DNA from: Heteronotia binoei | Taxonomy: Eukaryota | Direction of reading: 5' to 3' | DNA length: 64,000 bases | Assembly: GCF_032191835.1 (NCBI RefSeq) | Contig: NC_083227.1 | Span: 41,540,001-41,604,000, forward strand | Shown: piece by piece, positions 120 to 46,770 of the stretch | Position numbering within the stretch: the stretch's first letter is position 1 | Layout: the number at the start of each line of letters is the position of its first letter | The notes under the pieces: generated by a model | What the model was told of the DNA's origin: nothing | Seen by the model: only the letters and a program-made list of their open reading frames with translations | Databases searched by the model: none | Made by a program: the position numbers and the translations under genes

Positions 120-2332
120 CTAGTTTATCAAGGAAGAGGCCTGGGCCCCAGAAGGGGCAGGCGAGGGGAAGGACGGATGTTGGAAGCCTCGGGAGGTGAA
201 AGGCAGGGCCCAGGGTAGATCCAGGGAAGGGATGGGGAGGGAGGAGGGAGAAGGAGGGAAGGAAGACAGGGTGGGGAGGGGGCCTGGTGAACCGAAGGAG
301 GCAGAGAAGGCTGAGGCAGGGAGAGGAGCAGCAGGCTTGGGGGTGCCAGCAGCCAGCAGCGAAGCAGGGGCTGTGCCAGTGCCAGCAGAGGCCTTGTCGT
401 TGCTATGGGTGCGCTGGTGGCGGTTGAGGTGGGAGCTGCGGCTGAAGCATTTGCCACAGATGCTGCATTTGTAGGGCTTCTCCCCGGTGTGGGTGCGCTG
501 GTGGATGGTGAGCTCCGAGCGCTGGATGAAGGCTTTGCCACAGTCCCCGCAAGCATAGGGCTTCTCACCCAGGTGGATGCGCTGGTGTTTGATGAGGTTA
601 GAGCTGACGCTGAAGCACTTGCCGCAGGCATCGCAGCGGTACGGCTTCTCGCCAGTGTGCATGCGCCGGTGCTTGGTGAGGTCAGACTTCTGGATGAAGC
701 CCTTTCCACAGTCGGCGCACTTGTAGGGCTTCTCACCCAAGTGGGTGCGCTGGTGCTTCAGCAGGTTGGAACGCACGCTGAAACTTTTGCCGCACTCGTT
801 GCACTTGTAGGGCTTCTCGCCAGTGTGCATGCGCCGGTGTTTGGCCAGTGCCGAGTTCTGGGCAAAGCACTTGCCGCAGTCTATACAAGAGTAGGGCTTC
901 TCACCTGTCTGAGTTCCTTGGTGCCGCACGCCCTCCCCCCCGCCCCTCCCGCACTCACTGCAAGCCGGGCGCCGCCAGAGGAAACTCTTGCCGCAGTCAC
1001 TGCACTTGCAGGGCAGCAAGGTCCCACGCCGGCGTTTTCGCCGCCCGCCCAAGAAACCACAGTCCATGCAACGACAGGGCAGGTGCTCAGCACTCCTGTG
1101 CACCCGCTGGTGCCGCTCCAAGTGGGAGCTCTGTGAGAAGCCCTTACCACAGTCATCGCAGTGGTAGGGCTTGTCACCAGCATGGATGCGCTGGTGCCGG
1201 TCCAGGTGGGAACTCCAAGCAAAGCTCTTCCCACAGTCACTGCAGGTGTAGGGCTTGGCAGAGCCATCGGGGTGGCGGGTGCGCCGGTGCTGAAGCAGGG
1301 CACCGTTCAGCCCAAAGCTCTTGCCACAGTCTTCGCAGACATAGGGTTTCTCTGCAGCGTGGTGCGCACGCCGGTGCTTGGACAGCGCCGCGTTCTTGTT
1401 AAACCCTTTCCCGCAGTCACCACACTGGTAGGGTTTGGTGCTGGCTTTGCTTGCTGGTGTGGTTGTGGAAGCCAGGCAGCACTTGCAAGGAGAAGCCTGG
1501 ATGCTGCCAAAGTGGATGCGCCGGTGGCGGTCGAGGTGAGAACTCCAAGCAAAAGCACGGCCGCAATCCTCACAGACGTAGGGCTTCTCACCGGTGTGGA
1601 TGCGCCGGTGGCGCTCTAAGTGCGAGTTCCAGTTGAAGCCCTTGCCGCACTCGGTGCATTTGTAGGGCTTCTCTTCCAAGTGCTGCTTTTGGTGTTTGAT
1701 GAGGTGGGCAGGAAGGCCAAAGCTCTTGCCACAGACATTGCACTCGCAGGGCCGAGCTGGGCTCGCACTCGTCTTCTTGCCCACGTGACTGCGTTGGTGC
1801 TGGATGAAGGCCGAGCCAACGCTGAAGCTCTTGCCGCACTCGGCGCAGCGGTAGGGCTTGGTGCTGGTGTGGCGCCGCTGGTGGGTCACGAGGGTGGAGT
1901 TGAGGCGGAAGCACTTTCCGCACTCATTGCACTTGTAAGGCTTCTCCAGGCCGCTGCCACTGTGCAGCCGTGAGCGCTTGCCAAAGCCAAAGCCCTTCCC
2001 GCAATCGAGGCATCGCCCGGCATGGCTGAGCAGCCCGTGGTGGCCTCGTGGGGAGAACTTCTTGAAGCCACGGTGAGCAATGGGCTTGCTGGCCTGTTTC
2101 TTCCCCAAGGACTTCTTTGGCTGCTCCTTCAGGGCTGCCTGGCCCTGGCTTTCATTGCTGGCCTTCTCCTTCGACTTCTCCTGCAGAAGGTCCTGTTGGG
2201 TGTCTACTTTCTCCACTGCAATGTTCTCCCCACCGTCTTCTTCTCCTCCTCCATCCTGTGGTGTTGCCACCGCCTCCTCCTCCTCCTCTTCCTCCTCCTC
2301 ATTCCCATTGTTACTCATCATCCCATCATCTG
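120..2332 (-). CDS. ZNF-A terminal exon: acidic N-terminal region, 15 intact C2H2 fingers plus degenerate fingers, and a 94-aa Pro/Ser-rich tail
   Basis: The ORF 120..2321 has CxxC...HxxxH repeats with TGEKPY linkers. The frame stays open to a phase-1 acceptor (minus strand ttctctcattgttccag|CA GAT GAT GGG ATG) at 2332. Stop TAG at 120-122. Confidence 0.95.
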
Positions 2333-2896
2333 CTGGAACAATGAGAGAATCCAGTAACTCCTGTGGTCTGGGAAAGGAAACTTGGAAGAAGGGAATTGAA
2401 AAAGGCTGTCATGCGTTCATAGACCTGGCATCACAACTCATCATTCCTCCCCACCAACAATCTGCTGATTCTTATCAAGCCCACACCCTCCCACACCTCT
2501 GCCCACCACAGCCTGCCTTCAAAGTACCCCTGACATTCTCTGCTCAGTCAGGGAGGGAGGCGCCATGTCTCAGGTTCAATCCCCAGCATCTCCAGTTTAA
2601 CGGATCAAGTCACAGGTGATGCAGAAGACTTTTGTCTGACACCCTGGAAAGTGGCTGCCAGTCTAAGTAGACAATACTGATCTTGATAAACCAACAGTCT
2701 GACCTAGTATAAGGCAGCTTCATGTGTTTTCTGCATTTCCCATTTCCTGCCCCTTTGGAGAAAAAAAATTCAAAGAGTTTGAACCCAGGTACAAGTCACA
2801 AATAATTTGTCATGCCCACAGCAGCTTCCTCAGTTTCCCATTGGTAAAAAGGCCTGAGCCACCACATCAGATGTATTCTAGTTTCTCCCATGTGGT

Positions 2897-3150
2897 TAGT
2901 TTGGTGTAGTGGTTAAGTGTGCAAACTCTTATCTGGGAGAACCGGGTTTGATTCCCCACTCCTCCACTTGCAGCTGCTGGAATGGCCTTGGGTTAGCCAT
3001 AGCTCTGGCAGAGGTTGTCTTTGAAAGGGCAGCTGCTGTGAGAGCTCTCTCAGCCCCACCCACCTCACAGGGTGTCTGTTGTAGGGGGAGAAGATATAGG
3101 AGATTCGGAGAGAAGGGCGGGGTATAAATCTGCAGTTTTCTTCTTCTTTT
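2897..3150 (+). mobile_element. tRNA-derived SINE of the gecko type; related copies at about 6408-6690 (+), 18400-18580 (3' part), 19915-20162 (-), 22478-22735 (+)
   Basis: Head tttggtgtagtggttaag...gggtttgattcccc (A/B boxes), shared body, tail ending ataaatc(ttc)n. Confidence 0.8.
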
Positions 3151-3719
3151 TCTTAGTTATCACTGGAGTCCATTCAGATCCGGCACAGCAATCCCACCTG
3201 CTACTAGCAGTAATCCTGTCCCACTTAGGTTTCTCTCTATTAATGTGCCACTGGAATCCATGGAGGCTACATAGCAGAGGCGCCTTGTGGATTGTGACCT
3301 GTGCGTTTCCAGAGCAACCTGGTGGGTTCTGACTCCTCATCTGCAAGCAATTAAAGAGGAACTGCAAAGAAAGGGTAATTGCCTAGCAACCGTCAAATCT
3401 GTATCCAATTTCCTTTCCTCCCCTCCTCCTCCCCTGCTTCTTCCTCTGCAATTTACATTTTTGGTTGCCTGGTACTGATTGGGAACTTTAAGCATAGTTT
3501 GTTGCTCAGCCCAGCTTATTCAGGGGAGAGCTGATTTTCCTTGCTGACAAGCAGCCTATGCAAGTATGAGGATTTTGCCTAGAACCCCATCCCTAACTTG
3601 GCCACTGTCTGCCCATTTTTATTCTACCCTTCATCTGACAAGCTCAGGCAAGAGGACGTGGTTCTCTGGTTCTTCCTCATGACAAATTTTTGAAGCAGGC
3701 TGAGGTGAGAACAAGCGGT

Positions 3720-3840
3720 AGGAGAAGACGTGGCTCAGTGGTAGAGCATCTGCTCTACCTGCAGAAGGTCATGGGTTCAATCCCCAGCATCTCCAGTTAA
3801 AAAAAATCTACCTGAGATCCTGGAAAGTGGCTATCAGAGG
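3720..3840 (+). mobile_element. Squam3-like tRNA-derived SINE, 5' part; other copies at about 2560-2730, 21295-21485, 40020-40220, 50025-50240, 60135-60325
   Basis: TGGCTCAGTGGTAGAGCATCTGCT...GGTTCAATCCC head, followed in the other copies by the gacaatactgac...gcagcttc tail. Confidence 0.8.
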
Positions 3841-4952
3841 TGGCATTCTTAGTGCTTCCCCATGTAAAAGTTTCCCAGGACAAATAGCACATCAGAGAGA
3901 AAAAAAGACAGGTTCTGTCTAGTACGTTTTTTATCAAATCCTTGCTCTAAGGACCTCAGGGTAGTATTGTTTTCCCTGTGTCAGTTTATCCTACCAACAA
4001 TCCTGTGCGGTAGGCAAGGCTGAGAGAAGGTGAGCAGACCAGTGTCAACCAGCAAGGTTTGTGGCAGAGTGAGAACTCAAACCCAGGATTTCCAGATCCC
4101 AGCCCAACATCCCAAACACAAAGCTAGCCCTAGACCTCCTGGCACCTTAGGCAAGGTGGTTAGCCTTAGGCAAGGCTAACTTCTAGCACACACCCACCCC
4201 ACACGGATAATGTCATCAAGTCACATGGGGGCACCCAATTTGACACCTCTAGGAGGCCAGCGCCCTAGGCAACGACCTAGTTTTCCTAGTGATAGGGCCA
4301 GCCCTGTCCACACAATACACTGGCACTCACTTGCTGTGTAAGTTTTCTAACTTACAAGGAATTATTAGCCTAGAGGAACTTAAAGAAATGTACTCCCTCC
4401 CCTGAAGTCTGAAGTGGAACAATCCGTTCTACCACTTCCACATTCATCCCTGCCCCATTCTGCCATATTTGGAGAGCAGGCCTGTGTTTCTGCTATGGCG
4501 AGATATGCTGCTTCCAAGTGCACAGAACAGGTGCATCTCACCTGGGAGAAACTTACCAATTTCTCATCACAGGTAAACTGCAAGTCTGCGTATGTGTGTG
4601 TGCCATGAAGTCGTAACCAACTTATGGTGACCTCAGCAAGGAGCTTTCATGGCAAGTGAGAAGCAGAGGTGGTTTGCCACTGCCTTCCTCTGCAGAGTTT
4701 TCCTTGGCCGTTTCCCTTCTGAGTACCAACCCTGTTTAGTTTCCAATATCTGACAAGATCAGGCTATGCCATACTGTCTTTCCTCCTCGGCAAATCTGAA
4801 TCACTTGCAAATCTGTTGTTTTCTGCTTCCTGTTAAGGAGCAAAGCCACCCTCCAAAGGTTTCCCCAGAAACCCTGCAGTATCCTATGGTGTTGCAAGAG
4901 GAACACAAAGTTTAACCTCAGCCCTTCTGGCTGGCTTCTGCAGCAGACTTAC

Positions 4953-5027
4953 TAGGTGCCAGTCCTCTTCTCCGGTGAGATTCGGCAAAAGCAGTTATCC
5001 GGGGCCAGCTGATTGCAATTTCCTCTG
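4953..5027 (-). CDS. ZNF-A 75-nt internal exon encoding (A)EEIAISWPRITAFAESHRRRGLAP(T)
   Basis: Acceptor ccatccatag|CA and donor CCT A|gtaagt give a symmetric phase 1-1 exon with an open frame. The peptide is identical over 23 aa to the exon at 39268-39342. Confidence 0.9.
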
Positions 5028-7100: not shown

Positions 7101-7331
7101 ATCTCTACCAATGGTCCATCTTCTCCAGCATCCTGTCTCACACAGAGGCCAACCAGTTCCTTTGTACGGCCAACAACAGGACATAGAGGCCAAGACTTTC
7201 CCTTGATGTTTCCTCCTGGATCTGGGATTTAGAGGATGTGGAGGTTCCCCTCAGTCGCTATAGTTAGTAGCCATTGACAGACCTCTCCAAGAATCTATCT
7301 AATCCCATTTTAAAGCTGTTTATTCCTGTGG
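7101..7331 (-). mobile_element. Old CR1 LINE 3' end, interrupted by the 7332-10598 insertion
   Basis: CR1 3'UTR-like sequence on the minus strand that continues seamlessly at 10599 (ttattcc-tgtgg-acatc). Confidence 0.75.
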
Positions 7332-7597
7332 TAGGGTGGCCAGACCGTCCCGGTCTCCCGGGACATTCCCGGATCTGGCCACCCAATCCCGGATCCCGGG
7401 CTGCCTATACCGGGACCATTAAAGGTCCCGGTTTAGGCAGCCCCGGAGCCGGTGGGCCGCGGGCGCGGGCGGGGAAGGCGGGGAGTGAGGGAGGGAGCGT
7501 CCCTGCGCCTGCGCAGGGCCCCTGCGCACGCGCAGGGACGCTCCCACCCTCACTCCCCGCCTTCCCCGCCCGCGCGCGGGGCCCGGCGGCAGTGGTG

Positions 7598-8270
7598 GAG
7601 GCCTCTCCGTGGCCTCCGCTGGTCGCTGGAAGCCCTCCAGAGACTCTGGAGGGCCTCCAGCGACCAGCGGAGGCCGCGGAGAGGCCGCGGGGCACCCGGC
7701 GCTGGTCCCGGAAGGCCTTCCAGAGCCTCTGGAAGGCCTTCGGGGACCAGCGCCGGCCAGCGAAGGCTTCCCCGCGGCCTCCGCTGGTCCCTGGAGGCCC
7801 TCCAGAGTCTCTGGAGGGCCTCCAGGGACCAGCGGAGGCCGCGGGGAAGCCGCGGGGCACCCGGCGCTGGTCCCGGAAGGCCTTCCAGAGGCTCTGGAAG
7901 GCCTTCCGGGACCAGCGCCGGCCAGCGAAGGCTTCCCCGCGGCCTCCGCTGGTCCCTGGAGGCCCTCCAGAGTCTCTGGAGGGCCTCCAGGGACCAGCGG
8001 AGGCCGCGGGGAAGCCGCGGGGCACCCGGCGCTGGTCCCGGAAGGCCTTCCAGAGCCTCTGGAAGGCCTTCGGGGACCAGCGCCGGCCAGCGAAGGCTTC
8101 CCCGCGGCCTCCGCTGGTCCCTGGAGGCCCTCCAGAGTCTCTGGAGGGCCTCCAGGGACCAGCGGAGGCCGCGGAGCAGCCGGCGCTGGTCCCTGGAGGC
8201 CTCCAGAGGCCAGCGCCGGTAGCGGAGAGGCCCGGCGCTGGTCCCTGGAGGCCTCCAGAGGCCAGCCCCG
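7598..8270. repeat. GC-rich 165-bp tandem repeat (about 3.5 copies); each unit has two palindromes
   Basis: gaaggcttcc recurs at 7762, 7927 and 8092. Confidence 0.9.
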
Positions 8271-8372
8271 GCAGCTCCCTCCCTCCCTCGCCGCGAGGCC
8301 GCCGCCCGAGGACTCCCCGCCGCCGCCGCCGCTGGATCCGCCGCCCTGGAATAAGGTAAGGGGGCCGAAAGC

Positions 8373-8823
8373 NNNNNNNNNNNNNNNNNNNNNNNNNNNN
8401 NNNNNNNNNNNNNNNNNNNNNNNNNNNNNNNNNNNNNNNNNNNNNNNNNNNNNNNNNNNNNNNNNNNNNNNNNNNNNNNNNNNNNNNNNNNNNNNNNNNN
8501 NNNNNNNNNNNNNNNNNNNNNNNNNNNNNNNNNNNNNNNNNNNNNNNNNNNNNNNNNNNNNNNNNNNNNNNNNNNNNNNNNNNNNNNNNNNNNNNNNNNN
8601 NNNNNNNNNNNNNNNNNNNNNNNNNNNNNNNNNNNNNNNNNNNNNNNNNNNNNNNNNNNNNNNNNNNNNNNNNNNNNNNNNNNNNNNNNNNNNNNNNNNN
8701 NNNNNNNNNNNNNNNNNNNNNNNNNNNNNNNNNNNNNNNNNNNNNNNNNNNNNNNNNNNNNNNNNNNNNNNNNNNNNNNNNNNNNNNNNNNNNNNNNNNN
8801 NNNNNNNNNNNNNNNNNNNNNNN
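8373..8823. other. Assembly gap (451 N)
   Basis: Run of n. Confidence 1.
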
Positions 8824-8824
8824 C

Positions 8825-9351
8825 GCAGAGTGTTGGACTGGATGGGCCACTGGCCTGATCCAACAGGGCTTCTCTTATGTTCTTATGTGACGCAGAGTGT
8901 TGGACTGGATGGGCCACTGGCCTGATCCAACAGGGCTTCTCTTATGTTGTTATGTGATGCAGAGTGTTGGACTGGATGGGCCACTGGCCTGATCCAACAG
9001 GGCTTCTCTTATGTTGTTATGTGATGCAGAGTGTTGGACTGGATGGGCCACTGGCCTGATCCAACAGGGCTTCTCTTATGTTGTTATGTGATGCAGAGTG
9101 TTGGACTGGATGGGCCACTGGCCTGATCCAACAGGGCTTCTCTTATGTTGTTATGTGATGCAGAGTGTTGGACTGGATGGGCCACTGGCCTGATCCAACA
9201 GGGCTTCTCTTATGTTGTTATGTGATGCAGAGTGTTGGACTGGATGGGCCACTGGCCTGATCCAACAGGGCTTCTCTTATGTTATTATGTGACGCAGAGT
9301 GTTGGACTGGAGGGGCCACTGGCCTGATCCAACAGGGCTTCTCTTATGTGA
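8825..9351 (+). repeat. 67-bp tandem array (8 visible units) of the CR1 3' terminus
   Basis: Units start at 8825, 8892, 8959, 9026, 9093, 9160, 9227 and 9294 and match the CR1 tail at about 24765-24830. Confidence 0.92.
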
Positions 9352-9420: not shown

Positions 9421-10328
9421 CAATTTTGTTCTCAGATCCTGTATTTACTTCATCAGTATATGGGATAAGGCACTTTCTCAACTGTGCTGCATAATGCAGC
9501 CTATTTATTTTGTCCTGTTGGCTCTGTTGGCTCTATCTGCGCCACCTTCATCACTTTCGGGGTGTGGATCCCCCAGTGGAGTGGTCTCCCGACTCCCTCC
9601 GCCGGCTGTTTCTGATAGCCCTGCGCCCCCTCTTTCATTTGATATGTGTCCCGTGCGGGTGCCACCCTCCCGCCGGGAGATGCCGCAAAATGAGCCCCCT
9701 TGAGGCTTATGGCGGCAGGGCTCGGGGGAAGCGAGCTAGACTGCTGTTCTTTTGAGGGGTTATAGAGTGTTTCGAGCCCGTCCCTGTGGCATCGGTCCCA
9801 TCATTGTGGGGCCCAGGGGGCCGGCGCAGCGGCACGCTGAAGCAGCCTGTCGGTCACTTCCAGGTTCCTGTCCTGCATCTTGACCGGTGTTATTAGTGAC
9901 AGGCTGCTTCGGCGTGCCGCTGCGCCGGCCCCCTTGGTCCCACAACGATGGGACCGATGCCACAGGGACGGGCTCGAAACACTCTATAACCCCTCAAAAG
10001 AACAGCAGTCTAGCTCGCTTCCCCCGAGCCCTGCCGCCATAAGCCTCAAGGGGGCTCATTTTGCGGCATCTCCCGGCGGGAGGGTGGCACCCGCACGGGA
10101 CACATATCAAATGAAAGAGGGGGCGCAGGGCTATCAGAAACAGTCAGCGGAGGGAGTCGGGAGACCACCCCACTGGGGGATCCACACCCCGAAAGTGATG
10201 AAGGTGGCGCAGATAGAGCCAACAGAGCCAACAGGACAAAATAAATAGGCTGCATTATGCAGCACAGTTGAGAAAGTGCCTTATCCCATATACTGATGGA
10301 GTATATACAGGATTTGAGAACAAAATTG
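9421..10328. repeat. 908-bp palindrome: 431-bp arms (9421-9851 and 9898-10328), 46-nt loop
   Basis: The arms are reverse complements with about 10 mismatches counted by eye. Confidence 0.95.
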
Positions 10329-11613: not shown

Positions 11614-11687
11614 CCAAAGAGATCACATTCTCATAATTTTCCTGCATGTCGTCGCTGGGATCCAGAAGAGTCCACACGCTGCTATGC
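11614..11687 (-). CDS. ZNF-A KRAB-A-derived exon (HSSVWTLLDPSDD-MQENYENVISL); probable start ATG at 11647
   Basis: Acceptor ccttttcctccag|G and donor TTG G|gtaagg. WTLLDPS and MQENYENVISL match the KRAB-A consensus, with the QRALY-type segment missing. Confidence 0.85.
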
Positions 11688-14830: not shown

Positions 14831-15299
14831 GCATCTCTTCTCGATCCCGGGCGTGTCAACGTGTAGGGAGAGGGAGGCTAGAAAGCCGAACGCGATCCTG
14901 AGTCGCTCGCTTTCCTTCCTCCCCTTCCCAACATTTTCTCTCTTTCTCGCGCTCTCTGCAGCTTCTCGGTTACCTGGTGCTTCCGGTTCAAGAGTGAATG
15001 GATTGTGCCTGCGAAATCCGGAGACTCCTCTGGTGATTTATTAATTTTTAAGATTATTTTTAGCGATCAGTCCGAAAAAAAGAGAAAGAAAGAAAGCCAT
15101 AGGTTGCCGACCGGCTTGGTATTGAAAGGACACAGGAAGGGGCCGGAGGAAGCTGCTGGTGGTTGGGATTTGATGCTGAGAGGCGAGGAGGGGGAGGCAG
15201 GAAGGCGGGGAGGAGGTCTGGGGGGCGGAGGATCATAAAGAATAGAGAGCGAAGAGATCAGAAACCGTGGTGGTGGGAAGGGGGTGTCTCCCTGCCTTT

Positions 15300-15520
15300 C
15301 AACGGCGAAGAGACTCAAGCTGCCTCCATTGCGGATTGCAACTGGGGGAGTCCCCCTCCCGGCGACAGAAGACTGGAGGGATCCTATGCAAAGGGGCAGA
15401 CGGCCTTTCAGAAAGACCTCGAGCCGGGCAAGGACTTTCTCATTGTTTGGATAGGAGCAGCTTCCCCCCAGAGCCCCCGGCAATCCGCAGATCTGGTTGC
15501 TCCTGAGCCGAAGAAACCAG
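15300..15520 (+). other. Candidate upstream exon of ZNF-B (5' boundary unknown; probably 5'UTR or N-terminal extension)
   Basis: Donor AAACCAG|gtaaac at 15520/15521 is phase-compatible with the 18007 acceptor. The frame is open from 15163 but contains no in-frame ATG. Confidence 0.55.
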
Positions 15521-16196
15521 GTAAACGCCTTGAAGAGGAGCTCTGTAAATGGACTGGAAAGTCACCCCTGTACGGAAAATAAAAAGAGACGATCCGTGCT
15601 GGAAAGGATCGGGAACGGGTGGGGGGAGGAGTGAGCTCCCGAACCGCTGCTTCTATTGACACATGACCTTGTTAAACTCCTGCAAGGGACAGGTTCAGTT
15701 ACCTTGTCAAATAGCGTAATGGCCCAGCCAGCCCTGGGGTTTCTCTGGTCTTTAAAACTTTGAGGTTTGCAAAAAGAGGGGGAGAGGAGAGCTAGCAATT
15801 GCCCTCCAGGCCAATTCTTTGCCTAGCCGAAGCTCCTTTGTGCGGTGGTTCCCAGCCTGCTTGAATCCACATACACTTCTCAGACTTTGATTTGAAAAGT
15901 CTCCAGAAAATGTATTCTGCTTTTGTTGTTGTTGTTGTTGTTGTTCTAGAGGTTTTAAAATGTATAGTGTTCCTGCTGATCTGGATCTGACATTTGGTCC
16001 TGTAAATTGAAGAATGCTGGACTTTGAAATATATATATTTTTAAAAAGAAAGGAAACCATTACAGCCCCACTTGGCTGAATAACCATGTTCACAACCTTC
16101 TTCCTGGATGGCTTTGAACAACTGGCTTGGGTTTTTCCCACTCTACAAAGTGGGAATGGTAGGGATCTGTATCTCAGTTTGTGTTGAGTCACGTAA

Positions 16197-18006: not shown

Positions 18007-18135
18007 GACCTGTCCTCGGCAAGGAACTGGGTTGGTGTCAGATCATGGAGGATGAGTGGCTAGTTGTTGATCCTAACCAGAAGCCTATCTACAGGGAAAC
18101 TCACCAAGAGCCTTGTGAAAGTCTGGTGGCACTCA
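18007..18135 (+). CDS. ZNF-B divergent KRAB-A exon (GPVLGKELGWCQI-MEDEWLVVDPNQKPIYRETHQEPCESLVAL); candidate start ATG at 18045
   Basis: Acceptor cctcttgtttcag|GA, donor CTC A|gtaagt, 129 nt, phase 1-1. EDEWLVVDPNQKPIYRE...ESLVAL aligns with KRAB-A EEWALLDPSQKALYRD...SLVSL. The ATG has good Kozak context (atcATGG). Confidence 0.8.
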
Positions 18136-23012: not shown

Positions 23013-23117
23013 GATCTTCAAGTTCTGAATCCAATGAGATTTTCCTTGTGGAAGATGATGAAGAACCTTGCATCCCAGAGCCCGGAAGAAGGGAGAACCC
23101 AAGAAGAGCCAATATGG
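23013..23117 (+). CDS. ZNF-B KRAB-B-like exon (SSSSESNEIFLVEDDEEPCIPEPGRRENPRRANM)
   Basis: Polypyrimidine acceptor ttctccaagcag|GA, donor ATG G|gtgagg, 105 nt, phase 1-1. LVEDDEEPCIPE resembles KRAB-B LEQGEEPWxPD. Confidence 0.75.
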
Positions 23118-23649
23118 GTGAGGAGCAGATCTCAGCTGTTTAGGCCAAGAATGCTAGAGAGGTGTAGAGGTCAGAGCATCAGACTAGGAAGACCTGCATT
23201 CAGATCCTCACTCAGCCATGCAAATCATTGGCTGACTAACAGGCAGAAGGCTGTTTGGCCCCTGAGAGGTAGAACAGCCACTCAGCTGTTTCACACCTGA
23301 ACCAATGGGAGTGCTGCTCTAGCATCCAGTCTTCTTTCAGAAGGGTGATGGGATGTTGGAGCACAGCAACTGGAAGTTGAGGGCTGCCTGAGGGATCATT
23401 TAGACAGAGAAGTCTTATAGCAAGGGAGCAGGCAATTTCCTGCATAGCTCTGCCTGGTAGTGCAGCAGACTGGTTTAACTCAATCTCTGGGTGAGGATAG
23501 AGTTGTGAAGCCTGGCTCTGGTGATGAATAGACCTGATAACTACAAGCTTTAAAAAGAATTGACCACATACTCTGTATATTGATAAATCTTCTTTGTTGT
23601 TTTATAAACCTCCCGCTTTGGTAATCTCTGTACCCTTCAGGCTCAAAGT

Positions 23650-24830
23650 TTACCTTGACTTCCAGAAAGCTTTTGATAAAGTTCCTCATCAAAGGCTCCT
23701 TAGAAAGCTCGAGACTCATGGAGTAAAAGGACAGGTCCTCTTGTGGATCAAAAACTGGCTAATTAATAGGAAGCAGAGAGTGAGTATAAATGGGCAGTCT
23801 TCGCAGTGGAGGATGGTAAACTGTGGGGTGCCGCAGGGCTCAGTACTGGGTCCCATCCTCTTTAACTTGTTCATAAATGATTTGGAGTTGGGAGTGAGCA
23901 GTGAAGTGGCCGAGTTTGCAGATGACACTAAATTGTTCAGGGTGGTGAGAACCAGAGAGGATTGTGAGGCACTCCAAAGGGATCTGTTGAGGCTGGGTGA
24001 GTGGGCGTCAACGTGGCAGATGAGGTTCAGTGTGGCCAAGTGCAAAGTAATGCACATTGGGACCAAGAATCTCAGCTACAAATACAAGTTGATGGGGTGT
24101 GAACTGGCAGAGATTGACCAAGAGAGAGATCTTGGGGTTGTGGTAGATAACTCACTGAAAATGTCAAGACAGTGTGCGATTGCAATAAAAAAGGCCAACA
24201 CCATGCTGGGAATTATTAGGAAGGGAACTGAAAACAAATCAGCCAGTATCATAATGCCCCTGTATAAATCGATGGTGCAGTCTCATTTGGAATACTGTGT
24301 GCAATTCTGGTCACCGCACCTCCAAAAGGATATTATAGCATTGGAAAAAGTCCAGAAAAGGGCAACTAGAAAGATTAAAGGTTTGGAACACTTTCCCTAT
24401 GAAGAAAGGTTAAAACGCTTAGGGCTCTTTAGCTTGGAGAAACGTTGGCTGCGGGGTGACATGATAGAGGTTTACAAGATAATGCATGGGATGGAGAAAG
24501 TAGAGAAAGAAGTACTTTTCTCCCTTTCTCACAATACAAGAACTCGTGGGCATTCAATGAAATTGCTGAGCAGTCAGGTTAAAACGGATAAAAAGAAGTA
24601 CTTCTTCACCCAAAGGGTCATTAACATGTCGTGGCGGCTACAAGCATAGAAATATGGAGCAGAGGTCCATCAGTGGCTATTAGCCACAGTGCGTATATAT
24701 ATATGTGTGTATGTGTGTGTGTGTATATATATACATATATAAATTTTTTTTTGGCCACTGTGTGACACAGAGTGTTGGACTGGATGGGCCATTGGCCTGA
24801 TCCAACATGGCTTCTCTTATGTTCTTAATG
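23650..24830 (+). mobile_element. 5'-truncated CR1 LINE with RT fragment and 3' tail
   Basis: ORF 23594..24649 contains GVPQGSVLGP and FADD motifs; tail cttctcttatgttctt. Confidence 0.95.
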
Positions 24831-25227: not shown

Positions 25228-25660
25228 CACGCTTAGGGCACTTTAGCTTGGAGAAACGTCGACTGCGGGGTGACATGATAGAGGTTTACAAGATAATGCA
25301 TGGGATGGAGAAAGTAGAGAAAAATACTTTTCTCCCTTTCTCACAATACAAGAACTCGTGGGCATTCCATGAAATTGCTGAGCAGAAAGGTTAAAACGGA
25401 TAAAAGGAAGTACTTCTTCACCCAAAGGGTGATTAAGATGTGGAATTCACTGCCACAGGAGGTGGTGGCGGCCACAAGCATAGCCACCTTCAAGAGGAGG
25501 TTAGATAAAAATATGGAGCAGAGGTCCATCAGTGGCTATTAGCCACAGTGTGTGTGTGTGTGTGTGTGTGTGTATTTGGCCGCTGTGTGACACAGAATGT
25601 TGGACTGGATGGGCCATTGGCCTGATCTAACATGGCTTCTCTTATGTTCTTATGTTCTTT
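25228..25660 (+). mobile_element. Short CR1 3' fragment inserted inside a hAT MITE (25018-25953)
   Basis: Near-identical to the 3' part of the 23650-24830 CR1; MITE sequence resumes after the tail. Confidence 0.9.
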
Positions 25661-26396
25661 TCCTTCAGTTGGCTGAGGCTCCTCCCCCTCCTGGTCCTCT
25701 GGGGAAGGAAGGAAAGAGCCAGAGCTCCCTTTGCCCAGTTCTGTGGATCACATGAGAGAGATACAAAGAAACACCTTTAAAACCAATGAGTGTTAATCTT
25801 TAATTGTGTATGTCTGTGTCCTTTATAAAGTTCATATCTCTGCTTCCTAATCTTAAATAGGTACACAGATGGCCTAGCCCAACATAGTCTGGCCCGACAA
25901 GGTCTCATTTATGTCAGATTCTGCCCTCATAACAAATGAGTTCGACATCCCTGAGTATATTGTCCTGAACTCCTCAGAAGAAGAGCAGGGTAAAATGTGA
26001 CAGACATCCACAGAATGATTGGATTATTTTCATTATGCAGTCCACCTAAGCTTGAAGTATATGCTCTCTTCCCACTTTATCAGATCCATGTCTACTGCGA
26101 GCATACATATATTCCCTTGGGCATAGAAATGGATGTCTTGAGAATTTTCTTGAGAACTTCATTCCACATCTGCCATAGAAATGAGTGTCTTCAGAATTTT
26201 AACTTACACAGTTCTGGGAGGAACCATGAGGCCTAAAAGCAGAAGTCTCAAATTAGGAAGAAATTAACCAGAACTTTTATACCATAATTATATACCATAT
26301 ACCTCAGTAAATATATGTCCTACCATCCGTTTGTTGCTGGCACTTTCAGTTCAGAGGTGATCATTTGCAGTGAATTGTCATGTCTGTGTCTTCTAG

Positions 26397-27928
26397 CAGG
26401 TGAAGGACTGGGTAGCGAGGAGGAGGAGGAGAGCGAGGAGGAAGATGTTCAACAGCGGGACGGTCCTAAGGTGGTACAGCTGGATGCCAGCATGGTTTCT
26501 GGGGAATGTAAGAGCCTTCGCTGGAGGGTGGTGCAGCAGGTTGGCAGCGGTGGCAAGGTACTGGCAGGAGAGGGGCCGCCCATCATGGTTCTGCAGAAAG
26601 GATACGAGTGCGAGGACTGCGGGAAGGTGTTCAGTTGCAGCTCGCACTACAGCAAGCACCGGCGCACACACACGGGGGAGCGCCCCTTCCGTTGCGGAGA
26701 GTGCGGCAAGAGCTTCAATGTCAGCTCCAACCTGTACAGGCACCAGAGGGCCCACGCCAATGCTAACGCTGCCCCAGTCACTCCCACAGCCTCCCTGATG
26801 CCCTCCCGTGGCCTGCCTTACCAGTGTGCTGACTGTGGCCAGTGCTTCCGCCGCAACACAGAGCTGGTAACGCACCAGCGGCTTCACACCGGTCGCCTGC
26901 CTTTCCAATGCAGCGACTGTGGCAAGAGCTTTTCGTGGAGTTCACACTTTGCCCGGCATCTGCGGATCCACACTGGGGAGAAGCCCTACCCGTGCAACGA
27001 GTGCGGCAAGCGCTTCAGCCGCAGCTCCCATCTCTACCGGCACCAGCGCACCCATGGCACCAATGCTGCTGCTAACGTCACCCGTGCCTACATCTGCACT
27101 TACTGCGGGCGCAGTTTCAGCACCACACTGCACTTCGACCAGCACCAGCGGACCCACCGTGGCCGCAAACCCTACAAGTGCACCCTCTGTGGCAAGGCTT
27201 TTGCTGATGGTTTAGCCTTGGTGAAACACCAACGTTTGCACTTAATGGGTGGAGATCAACACCACCAGTGTTCAGAGTGTGGGCAAAGCTTTGGAGGGCG
27301 GTCGCAGCTGGCTCGCCACCGTCGGCTCCATGGCACTGCTGACAAGCCCTACGGGTGTGGCGAGTGCGGGCAAAGCTTTGGTGCTCGAACCCAGTTGGCC
27401 CAGCACCGACGCCTGCACATTTCTGCTGACAAGCCATATCACTGTGGAGAGTGTGGGCTGAGCTTCACATGGAGCTCACATTGGGAACGGCATCGGCGCA
27501 TTCATACTGGGGAAAGACCGTATTCTTGTGGGGACTGTGGAAAGCGCTTTGGGCGCACCTCTCACCTCTACAGGCACCAGCGCACCCATGCTGGCGGCCA
27601 GCCTCATGTCTGTCCGGACTGCGGTAAGAGCTTCAACAGCACCTTGCACTTCCAGCGTCACCAGCACGCCCACCACCTCGACTCAGATGGTGCTCAACTC
27701 TCTGCCCACACTTGCAGGGACTGTGGCAAGCCCTGCACTGATGCATCAGCCCTGCTTAAGCACCAGTGCATGCATACAGATGACAGGCCATATCCTTGCC
27801 CCCAATGTGGGCGCCGCTTTCGTGGCACTGCGTATCTCTACAGGCACTTACGCAGCCATGCTCACCAGGTGGAAGAGACTATGCTCATACCAACGTCTAG
27901 AAAGTGTGAGGATATTGTACCATGCTAA
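26397..27928 (+). CDS. ZNF-B terminal exon, 14 C2H2 fingers
   Basis: ORF 26315..27928 carries the C2H2 array. Acceptor tgtcttctag|CA GGT (tandem alternative at 26400). Stop TAA at 27926-27928. Confidence 0.95.
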
Positions 27929-35145: not shown

Positions 35146-35439
35146 ATACCTGGAGATTGTGAAGCTGGAGCCTGAGGAGGGCAGGGTTTGAGGAGGGAGG
35201 GACTTCAATGAGTCCACCTTCCAAAGCGGCCATTTTCTCCATGTAAACTGATCTCCATCTCCTGGAAATCAGTGGTAATCCCGGGAGATCTCCAGGCACT
35301 ACCTGGAGGCTGGCATTACTATTACCTGGACACATCTTTTTATCTCCTATACCATCCACCCATTTTCTTTCAGTGAACGTCCAACCTGATGAAGAGGTCT
35401 ATAGAACTCAAAAACTTGCTCGCTGTCTGGGTTGGTGAT

Positions 35440-36000
35440 TTTTGACGGCCCAGCGCGGCTGTCTGCCGGCCGCCAGCGTCCATGAGGCTGCCGGGGATGC
35501 TTTATGGATGGAGTAGGAAATTCCGGGAAGCCAGCAGAGGGCCCTGGCTGCGGCTGATCAGCCAAGGGGGCTTTGCTGTCTTTCCCCTGCTTCTTTCTGC
35601 CGGCTGCATCCGGGGTTGAGCTTCCTGGGTCAGAAAGCTGCTGCTGAATCCATAGGGACCCGGGCGTCCCCCGCCCCCTACAGAGCAGCCGCCGATGCCC
35701 CCAAGGGAACGCCGCTCCGCACCAGGGGTCTCCCGCGCCCGGCCGTGGTGGGGGACCGGATCCGGCTGGGAACCCCCCGCACTGGCCCGCCCCGGGTGAG
35801 GAGGAGGAGGCGGCGGCGGCGGCGGCAACCCCGGGGTCTCAAACTATTAACCCGGGAGCAGCCGGAAACGCCAGGGATTTGAAAGAGAAGGGTAAATAAA
35901 AGAACTCAATCCATTATCTCAAAAGGGGGGAAGACTTCATCCCCCTGGAAGAATCAGCAGAAAGGGACGGATCAAGGCTGCCGCCTCCGGCAAACTCACC
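35440..36000 (+). promoter_or_regulatory. CpG island; probable promoter and first exon of ZNF-C (candidate donor at 35891/35892)
   Basis: GC/CpG-rich block upstream of the ZNF-C exons, with donor-like GAAAGAGAAGG|gtaaat. Confidence 0.65.
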
Positions 36001-38071: not shown

Positions 38072-38199
38072 TTCTGCCACGTGGTTCAGAGTCGAGGACG
38101 CTTGTCATTTCACAAGTCAGCAACTTTACAGAAGTACTTTTGTGCATCTCCCTGAGAGTGACATCATGCAAGAGAACTATGAGAATGTGATCTCATTGG
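38072..38199 (+). CDS. ZNF-C KRAB-A-derived exon; probable start ATG at 38166 (MQENYENVISL)
   Basis: Acceptor ctctctctgcag|T and donor TTG G|gtaaga. The 128-nt length is close to the usual 127-nt KRAB-A exon, but only the last 11 codons keep the KRAB consensus. Confidence 0.85.
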
Positions 38200-39267: not shown

Positions 39268-39342
39268 CGGAGGAGATTGCAATCAGCTGGCCCAGGATAA
39301 CTGCTTTTGCTGAGTCCCACAGAAGGAGAGGTCTGATGTCTG
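39268..39342 (+). CDS. ZNF-C 75-nt exon encoding (A)EEIAISWPRITAFAESHRRRGLMS(D)
   Basis: Acceptor gcatcctcag|CG, donor TCT G|gtaagt, phase 1-1; paralog of 4953-5027. Confidence 0.9.
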
Positions 39343-40863: not shown

Positions 40864-41094
40864 ACACGGAGCCTGAACAAGGCCCAGTGGAACAGGCCCC
40901 CATGCAGGACCCAGTTGTGGCGGGTCCAAGTGAAGGTGGAATAAACGCTGATCTGCGGCGGCAGCTGGGCCTCATCCTGCAGACTGCTGGCAGGAGCCAG
41001 GTGGAGAAGATGCTGCGGGAGCTGGTGAAAGAACAGAGCCAGGATGGGAAGCGCAGACCTCGGAAGAAGGTGCTCAGGAGCCCCAAAAACGAAG
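40864..41094 (+). CDS. ZNF-C-specific 231-nt exon (DTEPEQGPVEQ...LRRQLGLILQTAGRSQVEKMLRELVKEQSQDGKRRPRKK...)
   Basis: Acceptor ttctgtggtgcag|AC, donor GAA G|gtgggc, symmetric phase 1-1, open frame with coding-like GC content in an AT-rich intron. Confidence 0.7.
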
Positions 41095-41351: not shown

Positions 41352-41530
41352 GGCCCTGACCTGGATGGCTGGATCTAGCTGGATCGCGTCAGATCTTGGA
41401 AGTTAAGCAGGGTGGGCCCTGGTCAGTACCTGGATGGGAGACCATCAAGGAAGTTCAGGGTGGTAGAGGAGGGCAATGGCAAGCCACCTCTGTTTGTCTC
41501 TTTCCTTGGGTTCCATAAGTGGTCTGCAAC
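41352..41530 (+). mobile_element. 5S rRNA-derived SINE (5S-Sauria-like); minus-strand relatives at about 4600-4790, 38575-38760, 56575-56770
   Basis: gatcttggaagttaagcagggtgggccctggtcagtacctggatgggagacc is a diverged 5S internal region, followed by a gcaatggcaagccacc tail. Confidence 0.75.
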
Positions 41531-44500: not shown

Positions 44501-44857
44501 GTGGAACAAGATAATTAAAAGCCTTGCATGGCTGCTGTAAAATGCTTGGGTTTGGGCTCTGAATGATCTCCACAGAAGAGAAAAATCTGCACAGGCGGCA
44601 GCAGCCCCTGGGACTGCCTCTCCTTGTCTTCTGGCCTGATTTCTGGAAGCAGGATGGTAAAGCAATGAGTGATACAACTCTGATGGTCTGAAAATACCCT
44701 CTTAACAGTGCCCTAAGCATGCCCAGATTCACCTAGCTCATCTAGACAACCTAAGAAAGGTACAGATTGAGGGATCAGAGCAATGGGTAGCAATTGTAGA
44801 AGGAACAAATGCCTTGCTGCTAAGATGGTCATGCTGTCTTTCATCTCCCCATCTCAG

Positions 44858-46770
44858 TTACAGTTGCTGACGAGAACGAAGAAGAGCTACAGGCAGAAGA
44901 GGACAGCTCAGCGAAGGTGGAGCCACCAGGTACCCAACTAGGGACATCTGATGGCCAGGGTGAGGGTAACACCAATGACAGCCAAGGCCACCTCAGCTCA
45001 GAAGAACACCAGCTGCTACAGGTGCCGACTGTACATCAGAGGGAGAGGAAGACATCCAGAAAGCTAAAAGACCAGCCTGCAGCTCCAGCTGCAGCAGAAA
45101 GACCAGGGGTCTGCATAGAGTGTGGGAAGAAGAACTTGGGTGGTAGTGGGCGAGGCCACAGTGAACCCACACCGGACAGACCGCATCAGTGTGCCGAGTG
45201 TGGACGTTGCTTCCGGCAGCGCTCCATCTTGGCTAAACACCAAAAGATCCACACAGGCGAGAAACCCTATCCGTGCACGGCCTGTGGCAAACGGTTCAAC
45301 CGTAGCTCCAACCTGGCACAACACCAGCGTGTGCACACAGGGGAGCGCCCCTTCCCCTGTGCTGCCTGCGGCAAGGCCTTCACCCAAAAATCAGACCTGG
45401 AGCGGCATCAGCGCGTGCACACAGGGGAACGGCCATACTCCTGCCAAGACTGTGGCAAGCGCTTCTCTGTCAGCTCCCACCTTGACCGGCACAGACGCAC
45501 GCACCAACACAATCCCCAAGAAGAACCCCCTGCTGCTGCCCCAGCCCCATCTGCTCACTGCTGCCCCGACTGTGGGAAGTGTTTTGGCCAGCGCTCGGCA
45601 CTCTCCAAGCACCGTAAGACTCATTCCGGTGAGCGCCCTTTCCCATGCAGTGCCTGTGGCAAGCGTTTCAGTCGCAGCTCCAACTTGGCACAGCACCAGC
45701 GTATTCACACTGGCGAGCGCCCATTCCCCTGTAGCGACTGTGGCAAACGGTTCATCCAGCGCTCTGACCTGGAACGCCACCAGCGTGTGCACACTGGTGA
45801 GCGCCCCTACACCTGCGCTCAGTGCGGCCGGGGCTTCTCAGTGAGTTCTCATCTTGACCGGCACCAGAGAGTCCACCAAGCCCAGGCTGCTGCAGCTGCC
45901 GCACACCGCTGCCCCGAGCATGTGAAGGGCTTCCTCCTCAGCACTGGGGGCAAACAGCTTCTCAAACACCAGCTGTACAGCAGCAAGGGGCGCCTCACGC
46001 GCAGCGGCCACTGCTTGGACTGCGGCAAGAGCCTGGGCAAAGTCCCGCTGCAGTTGCCGGCGCCCCCTGTTGAGAAGCCTTTCAAGTGCCAGGACTGTGG
46101 GAAAGCTTTTGCCCAGCGGTCGGCCTTGGTTAAGCACCAGCGCATCCACACAGGGGAGAAGCCGTTCTCCTGCATGGACTGTGGCAAGGCGTTCATTCAG
46201 AAATCAGACTTGACCATCCACCAGCGCATGCACACCGGCGAGAAGCCGTACCGCTGTGACACCTGCGGCAAGTGCTTCAGTGTCAGCTCCAACTTGCTGA
46301 CTCACCAGCGCACCCACTTGGGCGAGAAGCCCTACGCGTGCGGGGACTGCGGCAAGGCCTTCATCCAGCGCTCAGAGCTCACCATCCACCAGCGCACCCA
46401 CACCGGGGAGAAGCCCTACAAGTGCAGCATCTGCGGTAAATGCTTCAGCCGCAGCTCCCACCTCAACCGCCACCAGCGCACCCATAGCAACGACAAGGCC
46501 TCTGCCGGCACTGGCCTGGCCCCTGCTTCGCTGCTGACTGTCGGCACCCCCAAACCTGTCGCTTCTCTTTCCGCTTCATCCTTCTCTGCTTCCTACCCCT
46601 CACCCAACCCTCTTCCAACCTTGCCTTCCTTCCCCTCCTCTCCATCATCCCTCCCCATCCCTTCCTTGGACCTGCCCTGGTCTCTCGCCTTTCCATCCCG
46701 GGGCTTTTCTCATCCATCTTTCGCTTCTCCTGCTCCAGGCAGTGCTCAGACTTCATCCCTAATAAACTAG
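44858..46770 (+). CDS. ZNF-C terminal exon, 13 intact C2H2 fingers plus a 94-aa Pro/Ser-rich tail paralogous to ZNF-A
   Basis: ORF 44917..46770 extends in frame to the acceptor catctcag|TT ACA at 44858. Stop TAG at 46768-46770. Confidence 0.95.

What the first reader, a model, noticed from the sequence alone, without database searches (positions are those of the whole stretch)
120..46770. Candidate system: three ZNF genes with non-canonical KRAB, conserved ends and swappable finger cores
Seen: A (-) and B (+) are head-to-head, and C (+) is an inverted paralog of A. A and C share the N-terminal module, the last fingers (helices QKSDLT, VSSNL, QRSELTI, RSSHLNR; the last two fingers identical) and the tail, but the upstream arrays are unrelated (A: 9 fingers rich in WSSH/WNSH; C: a duplicated 4-finger block). 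A degenerate G.CLDCGK...EKP finger occurs in both, at different array positions. Inference: a constant effector scaffold with a common DNA or protein-contact block, retargeted by exchanging N-terminal fingers and probably TRIM28-independent.
Basis: inference. Interest (0 to 1): 0.7.

Follow-up and report, generated by a model that had tools for sequence, protein, structure and literature searches.

The report
Gecko zinc-finger trio with vestigial KRAB
Three neighbouring gecko zinc-finger genes carry only remnants of the KRAB repressor domain; one is a reptile- and bird-wide gene whose DNA-reading residues have hardly changed, and a second is its old, fast-diverged inverted copy, so this looks like ordinary duplication and divergence, not a finger-swapping system.

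Summary
The three genes are real, and I could model all their coding exons. A is on the minus strand (773 codons), B on the plus strand (574) and C on the plus strand (750).

- **Gene C:** it is the gecko copy of a gene found from birds to snakes. The helix residues of its 13 fingers are almost letter-identical in all of them.
- **Shared N-terminus:** C and a second gene family elsewhere in the genome share it. It holds the last 13 residues of KRAB-A, a 24-residue exon and a 76-residue helical exon. An exhaustive search found the helical exon only in sauropsids.
- **Gene A:** it is an old inverted duplicate of C. It keeps the KRAB relic, the 24-residue exon, the last four fingers and the tail, but has lost the helical exon.
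- **A's upstream fingers:** they are collinear with C's, not unrelated, and have diverged very fast.
- **Gene B:** it is a separate KRAB-ZNF with a truncated, divergent KRAB A and B box.
- **KAP1/TRIM28:** residues known to contact it are missing, so independence from TRIM28 is plausible but untested.
- **Finger exchange:** nothing supports it.
- **Assembly gap:** it lies in A's first intron and breaks no exon.
- **Expression:** RNA evidence could not be obtained. I found no ortholog of A and no mammalian ortholog.

The parts
11614..11687 (-). Gene A, KRAB-A relic exon (74 nt). The in-frame ATG is at 11647-11645. It encodes ..WTLLDPSDDMQENYENVISL and ends in phase 1.
   Evidence: Splice sites were read. 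Pfam KRAB scores 19.2 bits (threshold 20.4) and matches profile positions 29-41 only. It is hit by 41 canonical KRAB queries at the permissive setting; the best is E = 3e-4. It lies across the assembly gap from the rest of A.
8373..8823 (.). Assembly gap, inside A's putative intron 1.
   Evidence: The flanks carry unlike tandem repeats (165-bp unit at 7599-8182; 67-bp unit at 8825-9349). No exon is interrupted.
4953..5027 (-). Gene A, exon 2 (75 nt, phase 1 to 1). It encodes AEEIAISWPRITAFAESHRRRGLAP.
   Evidence: The first 23 residues are identical to C's exon 2 despite about 10 synonymous differences (dS about 1.0, dN 0.06).
120..2332 (-). Gene A, terminal exon. In order it holds an acidic linker, one pseudo-finger, fingers A1-A9, a degenerate spacer, fingers A10-A15 and a 94-residue Pro/Ser tail ending SLIN. 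The acceptor is ttgttccag|CA.
   Evidence: The phase-1 acceptor gives a 773-codon reading frame when joined on paper to exons 1 and 2. Every one of the 15 fingers keeps its zinc ligands.
120..818 (-). The part of A that is alignable with C at DNA level: the last fingers and the tail.
   Evidence: 81% identity with 46778-46072; over the gap-free 201-residue alignment (A12-A15 plus tail), dS is 0.68 and dN 0.10 overall, and dS is about 0.3 with dN = 0 in the last two fingers.
15201..15600 (.). CpG-island-like stretch between A and B. It is a candidate shared bidirectional promoter (inference only).
18007..18135 (+). Gene B, KRAB-A-like exon (129 nt). The ATG is at 18045. It encodes MEDEWLVVDPNQKPIYRETHQEPCESLVAL.
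   Evidence: Pfam KRAB scores 21.2 bits (above the 20.4 threshold) over profile positions 13-41. It is 77-80% identical to the start of the Phrynosoma model P0256.
23013..23117 (+). Gene B, KRAB-B-like exon (105 nt). It encodes ..NEIFLVEDDEEPCIPEP..
   Evidence: It is 73% identical to P0256 residues 32-68. It is phase 1 to 1.
26400..27928 (+). Gene B, terminal exon with 14 fingers and no shared tail.
   Evidence: The frame adds up to 574 codons.
35401..36000 (.). CpG-island-like stretch upstream of C. The 5' end of the Gekko japonicus gene model maps here.
38072..38199 (+). Gene C, decayed KRAB-A exon (128 nt). The conserved ATG is at 38166. It encodes MQENYENVISL.
   Evidence: Pfam KRAB scores 17.0 bits over positions 29-41 only. 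Traces of the whole A box remain in frame upstream (E = 4e-4).
39268..39342 (+). Gene C, exon 2 (75 nt).
40864..41094 (+). Gene C, exon 3 (231 nt). It encodes an amphipathic helix, ..DLRRQLGLILQTAGRSQVEKMLRELVKEQ.. It is the only copy in the window.
   Evidence: It has 18 relatives among 1.84 billion representative proteins, and every named one is a sauropsid.
44858..46770 (+). Gene C, terminal exon. In order it holds a pseudo-finger, C1-C4, a spacer, C5-C8, a 63-residue spacer with a second pseudo-finger, C9-C13 and the tail.
   Evidence: The helix string is conserved in squamates and budgerigar.

Best explanation
The window holds a small cluster of three KRAB-derived C2H2 zinc-finger genes.

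GENE C
C is the gecko ortholog of an unstudied sauropsid gene that annotation pipelines label 'ZNF345-like' or 'ZNF2-like'. Translation starts at a Met inside the old KRAB-A box. The N-terminus therefore consists of:
- the last 11-13 KRAB-A residues;
- a 24-residue exon in the KRAB-B position;
- a 76-residue exon forming a second amphipathic helix.

Its 13 fingers have frozen specificity residues. I infer that it reads one long, fixed DNA target and recruits an unknown partner through the two N-terminal helices, not KAP1/TRIM28.

GENE A
A is an old inverted duplicate of C.
- It kept the relic exon, exon 2, the last four fingers and the tail under purifying selection.
- It lost the helical exon 3, which is a clean phase 1-1 exon loss.
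- It gained a finger.
- It changed most contact residues in its nine upstream fingers while keeping every zinc ligand.

This is neofunctionalisation in place. I infer that A shares a C-terminal half-site with C but reads a different extension, and has a reduced effector end. A short gene-conversion tract over the last two fingers and the start of the tail probably explains their near-identity.

GENE B
B is a separate, squamate-conserved KRAB-ZNF whose A box lacks its first 12 positions.

STATUS OF THE CLAIMS
- Shown: gene structures, homology, conservation and selection signatures.
- Inferred: start codons, loss of TRIM28 binding, DNA-target logic, age of the duplication and the conversion tract.
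For: - **Gene models:** exon and splice models have frames that sum to whole codons.
- **KRAB scores:** Pfam scores are. A profile-profile alignment places the family N-terminus on canonical KRAB A+B columns 30-57 (probability 85%).
- **Conservation of C:** its helix string is conserved in Sphaerodactylus, Gekko, Anolis, Crotalus, Varanus and Melopsittacus.
- **Conserved start:** 30 database proteins from squamates, turtle, crocodilian and birds carry MQE[NS]YE..ISLAEEIA.SWP at or near their start.
- **Exon 3 range:** it is restricted to sauropsids in an exhaustive HMMER search.
- **Placement of A:** it falls inside the C clade and away from the D-type family (99/96 support).
- **Collinearity:** A and C arrays align in order.
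- **Selection:** dN/dS is about 0.15 in the shared part; exon 2 has dS about 1.0 with dN 0.06.
- **Rates:** upstream dS is saturated, against 0.5-0.6 downstream. A's upstream branch is 2.68 substitutions per site, against 0.2 or less for squamate C genes.
- **Conversion tract:** gecko-type derived states occur in A14, the start of the tail and one late tail site that Anolis shares; ancestral-type states lie before A14 and in the mid tail.
- **Exon 3 in A:** there is no copy near A.
- **Structure:** the AlphaFold2 model of the turtle N-terminus shows two isolated helices, residues 2-32 and 67-98.
- **B and C adjacency:** the chimeric Phrynosoma model P0256 runs from B's exons into C's.
- **KAP1 contacts:** PMC9753469.
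- **Old variant KRABs rarely bind KAP1:** PMC6745500.
Against: - Expression, the start codons and A's exon 2 to terminal-exon junction are unverified.
- **No ortholog of A's upstream array.** The best matches were 37-47% identical. That is odd for an old gene, and it leaves open a lineage-specific or decaying copy.
- **The relic exon of A lies beyond an assembly gap.**
- **The age of the duplication is unresolved.** A clade of A plus the gecko C genes is not rejected (p-AU 0.11). The conversion tract rests on seven informative sites and small dS samples.
- **C's exon 1 is open upstream of the Met.** Some isoforms could therefore encode more of the decayed A box.
- **TRIM28 binding was not tested.**
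Confidence: 0.65

Rival explanations
1. A constant scaffold (N-terminal module, last fingers and tail) is retargeted by swapping whole upstream finger cassettes between genes.
For: - The ends are conserved while the upstream helices differ.
- Synonymous divergence is saturated upstream but 0.5-0.6 downstream, as a chimeric origin would also give.
- Some A fingers resemble B fingers at 74-77% DNA identity.
Against: - The arrays are collinear, including the pseudo-finger and both spacers.
- C's array is fixed from birds to geckos.
- The similarity between A and B fingers is in the range seen between any fingers here.
- Exons 1 and 2 also show old divergence.
Confidence: 0.08
2. A is an unexpressed or decaying duplicate. 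It has lost exon 3, carries degenerate fingers and has no known ortholog, and its open frame is a leftover.
For: - There is no exon 3.
- There is no ortholog of A among database proteins.
- There is no RNA evidence.
- The upstream branch is very long.
Against: - A 737-codon open exon survives with all 60 zinc ligands of its 15 fingers intact, despite dS of 0.7 or more. My own rough estimate is that neutral drift at that depth would have produced tens of stop codons.
- dN/dS is about 0.15 in the shared part, and exon 2 has 23 of 24 residues conserved over about 10 synonymous changes.
- The splice sites and phases are intact.
Confidence: 0.15
3. A is a young, gecko-specific duplicate of C. Its upstream fingers changed quickly under positive selection, and no gene conversion took place.
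For: - For the shared 3' part, A's nearest rows are the gecko C genes.
- The upstream partition does not reject a clade of A with the gecko C genes (p-AU 0.11).
- No ortholog was found outside this genome.
Against: - dS is about 1 or saturated in exon 2, the tail end and the upstream fingers.
- Ancestral-type states flank the gecko-type stretch.
- In the long spacer, A keeps a CSECGR remnant that matches an intact budgerigar finger. All squamate C genes have lost it.
Confidence: 0.2

Closest known systems
Variant-KRAB zinc-finger proteins (vKZFPs; Helleboid et al. 2019, PMC6745500)
   Same: Both are old, individually conserved KRAB-derived ZNF genes whose A box departs from the consensus. They are under purifying selection and mostly do not recruit KAP1 (only 1 of 18 tested did).
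   Different: The human vKZFPs keep a full-length, divergent A box. Here A and C keep only the last 13 positions and appear to start translation inside the box. They add a sauropsid-only helical exon. No mammalian member was found.
Canonical KRAB-ZNF / KAP1(TRIM28) repressors (ZNF10, ZNF93; PMC9753469)
   Same: The gene layout is the same: an A-box exon, a short second exon and one large finger exon. The finger arrays use TGEKP linkers. The A-box end, MxENYxNxxSL, is retained, including Glu35 and Asn36 in A and C.
   Different: Asp8, Val9, Ile11, Phe13, Glu17 and Leu21 are absent from A and C. B lacks Asp8/Val9 and has Pro for Asn36. C's contact residues are frozen, unlike the fast-evolving young clusters.
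Database gene models 'zinc finger protein 345-like / 2-like' (P0007, P0009, P0010, P0015, P0100, P0121)
   Same: These are orthologs of gene C. They share the N-terminus, the 13-helix string, the spacers and the tail ending SLIN.
   Different: They are automatic names only, with no functional study. None corresponds to gene A.
DUF3669-KRAB ZNFs (ZNF746, ZNF777; PMC6923878)
   Same: This is another old KRAB-ZNF subfamily. It has an extra conserved N-terminal domain that oligomerises and contributes to repression.
   Different: There is no sequence relation. No Pfam family matches exon 2 or exon 3.

Membership tests
KRAB domain (Pfam PF01352) | The A box matches the Pfam model at or above the gathering score of 20.4 bits. 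| tested here: not met
   For genes A and C, one search gives 19.2 bits (A) and 17.0 bits (C), with only profile positions 29-41 of 42 aligned.
KRAB domain (Pfam PF01352) | The same feature, tested for gene B. | tested here: met
   21.2 bits over positions 13-41. The first 12 positions are missing.
KRAB-ZNF / KAP1 repressors | The KAP1-contact residues of the A box are present (Asp8, Val9, Ile11, Phe13, Glu17, Leu21, Tyr29, Val32, Met33, Glu35, Asn36; PMC9753469). | tested here: not met
   - A and C, read from the conserved Met, keep only Met33, Glu35 and Asn36 and the aliphatic positions after them.
- B keeps the EW motif and Glu35. It lacks Asp8/Val9 and has Pro at position 36.
KRAB-ZNF / KAP1 repressors | Physical binding of KAP1/TRIM28 and silencing that depends on H3K9me3. 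| not testable with these tools
   This needs co-immunoprecipitation and reporter assays.
KRAB-ZNF gene architecture | An A-box exon, a short B-box exon and a single exon holding all the fingers. | tested here: met
   The family N-terminus aligns with KRAB A+B columns 30-57. The B-box part of that alignment has low confidence.
C2H2 zinc-finger proteins | Tandem C-x2-4-C-x12-H-x3-5-H fingers. | tested here: met
   (PF00096, E = 1e-69 to 1e-85). One search counts 15 fingers in A, 14 in B and 13 in C.
Sauropsid C-type orthogroup ('ZNF345-like') | The MQENYENVISL-AEEIAISWPRITAF start, the exon-3 helix, the 13-helix string and a tail ending SLIN. | tested here: met
   Gene C meets all of these.
Sauropsid C-type orthogroup ('ZNF345-like') | The same features, tested for gene A. 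| tested here: not met
   A has the start, the last four helices and the tail. It lacks exon 3, and 8 of the 9 helices in its upstream array differ. A is a paralog inside the clade, not an ortholog.
Variant-KRAB KZFPs (Helleboid 2019) | A divergent A box that is old, conserved and under purifying selection. | tested here: inconclusive
   Age and constraint are met. However, the A box is truncated and not merely divergent, and the class was defined on human proteins.

The most novel reading that the evidence does not exclude
Sauropsids may have built a new effector domain from the wreck of a KRAB. The last third of KRAB-A fuses with a remodelled B-box exon into one long helix, and a new amphipathic helix (..QVEKMLRELV..) follows. 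The module is nearly invariant across sauropsids in two ancient paralog families. It would recruit a cofactor other than TRIM28 to a fixed DNA target. Gene A would then be a natural variant that lacks the second helix and shares the C-terminal half-site, so it could compete with or modulate C.
Probability: 0.3. Interest if true: 0.55.

Novelty: new variant of a known kind. Interest (0 to 1): 0.4.

Why it matters
Work on KRAB-ZNFs is dominated by mammalian, TRIM28-dependent, fast-evolving repressors of transposons. This cluster points to a different kind of family.

- It is restricted to reptiles and birds.
- Its KRAB has shrunk to a stub and been rebuilt into a very conserved two-helix N-terminus.
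- Its DNA-reading residues have hardly changed between birds and geckos.

That pattern suggests a conserved regulatory target and an unknown cofactor. Both could be tested directly with ChIP-seq or HT-SELEX and with AP-MS.

The A/C pair also gives a natural comparison: same tail and last fingers, different upstream fingers, with and without the second helix. As a cluster, though, it evolves in the ordinary way for the family, and the genes are already predicted in public annotations.

Tried and rejected
- **KRAB regex scan:** a six-frame regex scan for canonical KRAB-A motifs found nothing. The relic exons appeared only with database homologs and KRAB queries.
- **Exon 3 near A:** tblastn and a profile HMM run with --max found none.
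- **Orthologs of A:** two word-index searches returned only C orthologs or generic ZNFs at 37-47% identity. In one search only the 8000 candidates sharing most words were scored, so absence is weak evidence.
- **RNA evidence:** The look-up of sequencing runs gave only shares of 0.05-0.09, in runs mostly guessed to be RNA.
- Later work on A's 3' end was done only in local scripts.
- **ESM Atlas:** the look-up of the N-terminal module scored 0.76, which is noise level.
- **Fold search:** I did not run one, because the model is two isolated helices with pTM 0.23.
- **Literature:** searches for the family's motifs found no paper.
- **Spliced proteins:** exons were searched one by one by reference.
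- **Dating the duplication:** the tree of the upstream partition was inconclusive.

Full report
**What is in the window**

Three long C2H2 exons stand out:
- A, at 120-2321 on the minus strand;
- B, at 26315-27928 on the plus strand;
- C, at 44917-46770 on the plus strand.

The repeats present include CR1-type LINE fragments.

A and C align over their whole length at 54% protein identity. From finger A12/C10 to the stop they align without a gap. At DNA level only 112-818 against 46778-46072 is alignable, at 81% over 708 bp, and the match ends 8 bp past the stop codon.

**The assembly gap**

The gap at 8373-8823 is flanked on the left by a GC-rich 165-bp tandem repeat (7599-8182). On the right it is flanked by a 67-bp tandem array (8825-9349, 7.8 copies, 98% matches).

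It lies between the exon I assign as A's first coding exon (11614-11687) and A's exon 2 (4953-5027), so it sits in an intron. No exon of any of the three genes crosses it. The ORFs that run through it are artefacts of X runs in GC-rich repeats.

The consequence is that linking the relic exon to the rest of A depends on scaffold continuity. Strand, phase and the parallel structure of C all fit that link, but I could not test it.

**Gene models**

No canonical KRAB motif turned up in a six-frame regex scan. The upstream exons came from mapping database homologs back to the window, and the splice sites were read directly.

| Gene | Exons (window coordinates) | ATG | Codons |
|---|---|---|---|
| C (+) | 38072-38199, 39268-39342, 40864-41094, 44858-46770 | 38166 | 750 |
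| A (-) | 11687-11614, 5027-4953, 2332-120 | 11647 | 773 |
| B (+) | 18007-18135, 23013-23117, 26400-27928 | 18045 | 574 |

- All internal exon boundaries are phase 1, and each frame sums to whole codons.
- B's second exon was found through the Phrynosoma model P0256.
- The exons were searched one at a time, by reference. I built and searched no joined protein.

**How much KRAB is left**

| Exon | Pfam KRAB score (threshold 20.4 bits) | Profile positions matched |
|---|---|---|
| C's relic exon | 17.0 bits | 29-41 of 42 |
| A's relic exon | 19.2 bits | 29-41 of 42 |
| B's first exon | 21.2 bits | 13-41 of 42 |

- Canonical KRAB queries hit all three exons.
- C's exon still shows traces of the whole A box in frame upstream of the Met.
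- Thirty database proteins from squamates, a turtle, alligator and birds carry the same MQE[NS]YE..ISLAEEIA.SWP motif at or near their start, and most gene models begin exactly there. The internal Met is therefore the start that these models agree on.
- A profile of this N-terminus aligns with canonical KRAB A+B columns 30-57 (probability 85%). This places the 75-nt exon in the B-box position. The B-box part of that alignment has low confidence.
- B's second exon (..NEIFLVEDDEEPCIPEP..) looks like a B box to me. That is my reading and was not scored.

**The third exon and the wider family**

C's 231-nt exon encodes ..DLRRQLGLILQTAGRSQVEKMLRELVKEQ.. It matches no Pfam family.

An exhaustive phmmer search of 1.84 billion representative proteins found only 18 relatives. 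Every named one is a sauropsid: lizards, snakes, the turtle Platysternon, alligator, ostrich, penguins and a manakin.

The word-index search with the N-terminus found two groups:
- the C orthologs, including budgerigar P0121;
- a second family of about 620 residues (called D-type here) in squamates, alligator and ostrich.

The D-type family shares the N-terminus and the last five-finger block (QRSALSK QRSDLTI VSSNLSK QRSELLI RRAHLKR), and most members have an LPW-type tail motif. It is not encoded in this window.

AlphaFold2 on the turtle N-terminus gives two isolated helices. Residues 2-32 have pLDDT 76-92 and residues 67-98 have pLDDT 74-80. There is no compact fold (pTM 0.23). No paper in the library holds these motifs.

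**C is an ancient, frozen gene**

C's 13 helices are QRSILAK RSSNLAQ QKSDLER VSSHLDR / QRSALSK RSSNLAQ QRSDLER VSSHLDR / QRSALVK QKSDLTI VSSNLLT QRSELTI RSSHLNR.
- They recur almost letter for letter in Sphaerodactylus, Gekko, Anolis, Crotalus and Varanus, and largely in budgerigar.
- The duplicated four-finger block is therefore old, and it is not evidence of recent shuffling.

**A is a collinear, fast-diverged paralog**

MAFFT and BLASTP both align A and C in order:
- A's pseudo-finger with C's first pseudo-finger;
- A1~C1 and A2~C2, with A3 as an extra finger;
- A4~C3 and A5~C4;
- a non-canonical spacer in both genes;
- A6-A9 with C5-C8;
- a long degenerate spacer in both genes;
- A10 with C's second pseudo-finger;
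- A11~C9 and A12-A15 with C10-C13;
- the tail.

Several results describe how A has evolved.
- **Collinearity:** helix identity along this pairing is 28/56, against 20.5 +/- 2.6 for permuted pairings (0.6% reach it).
- **Placement:** A falls inside the C clade and away from the D-type family (99/96 support).
- **Shared 3' part:** dS is 0.68 and dN 0.10.
- **Exon 2:** it has about 10 synonymous differences and 23 of 24 residues identical.
- **Upstream fingers:** dS is saturated, and dN is 0.46 in helices against 0.27 in backbones.
- **Branch length:** A's upstream branch is 2.68 substitutions per site, against 0.2 or less for squamate C genes and 0.84 for the bird.
- **Integrity:** every zinc ligand of A's 15 fingers is intact.
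- **Exon 3:** A has no copy of it. The profile HMM finds a single hit in the window, which is C's.

**Age of the duplication and gene conversion**

The last two fingers have dS of about 0.3 and dN of 0. The start of the tail has dS 0.47, while the end of the tail and exon 2 have dS of 1 or more.

Seven sites distinguish gecko C genes from the other C orthologs.
- A carries the gecko state at three adjacent sites in A14 and the start of the tail, and at one late tail site where Anolis has the same state.
- A carries the ancestral state at the three remaining sites, before A14 and in the mid tail.

In the long spacer, A keeps a CSECGR remnant that aligns with an intact budgerigar finger. All squamate C genes have lost it.

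I read this as an old duplication, possibly older than crown squamates, followed by a short conversion tract. The evidence is thin, and the tree test does not reject a gecko-specific origin (p-AU 0.11).

I found no ortholog of A's upstream array. Those searches have the limits described under what could not be done.

**B**

B has 14 fingers, no shared tail and a different N-terminus. The chimeric Phrynosoma model P0256 starts with B's three exons and runs into C's exon 3 and finger exon. B and C are therefore neighbours on one strand in an iguanian as well. Nothing links B functionally to A or C.

**TRIM28**

PMC9753469 reports several KRAB-A residues as KAP1 contacts required for silencing: Asp8, Val9, Ile11, Phe13, Glu17, Leu21, Tyr29, Val32, Met33, Glu35 and Asn36.
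- Read from the conserved Met, A and C keep only Met33, Glu35 and Asn36.
- B lacks Asp8/Val9 and has Pro at position 36.

PMC6745500 found that only 1 of 18 tested human variant-KRAB proteins bound KAP1 well, and that such proteins are old. Independence from TRIM28 is therefore a reasonable inference. It is not a result.

**What could not be done**

- The run search gave only small shares.
A's 3' end was handled only in local scripts.
- As a result, expression, start sites and splice junctions are all unverified.

**Verdict**

The finger-swapping reading is not supported: this is duplication and in-place divergence next to an ancient, frozen gene.

The more interesting result is at family level. 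An unstudied, sauropsid-only ZNF family has a KRAB stub rebuilt into a highly conserved two-helix N-terminus.

Noticed in passing
window 23594-24829 and 62454-63942: These are CR1-type LINE reverse-transcriptase fragments. Positions 23961-24628 and 63275-63942 are 95% identical, which suggests a recently active family. One copy sits in B's second intron.
   Followed up: no
window 8825-9349: This is a 67-bp tandem array (7.8 copies, 98% matches) abutting the assembly gap. Its unit matches the LINE fragments near 24761-24827 and 25586-25655 at 91-97%, so the satellite appears to have grown from a LINE-related sequence.
   Followed up: partly
window 7201-8400 and 9601-10200: These are GC-rich, CpG-island-like stretches inside A's putative intron 1, on both sides of the gap. 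The left one is a 165-bp tandem repeat built of 82-bp half-units. They could be a promoter inside A, not intron filler.
   Followed up: no
database proteins P0147 and P0148 (Podarcis, Zootoca): Gene models named 'tigger transposable element-derived protein 1-like isoform X3' begin with the family's MQENYDNVISLAEEIAISWPRITAF N-terminus. Either they are chimeric predictions or the 5' exons of a C-type gene are spliced to a Tigger transposase ORF in lacertids.
   Followed up: no
database protein P0259 (Naja naja): This 255-residue model joins the C-type N-terminus directly to the Pro/Ser tail and skips the whole finger array. It is either an annotation artefact or a finger-less isoform.
   Followed up: no
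tails of A (window 120-404) and C (46486-46770), and D-type proteins: The most conserved tail motif is L[DE]LPW in C-type proteins, LGLPW in squamate D-type, and ALDLSR / QDLSW in ostrich and alligator D-type. From memory this resembles the PxDLS motif that binds CtBP. That is a lead only and was not tested.
   Followed up: no
window 52012-59934: An AGPAT1-like gene lies downstream of C. An earlier finding of this scan covers it. It would serve as a synteny anchor for the cluster.
   Followed up: no
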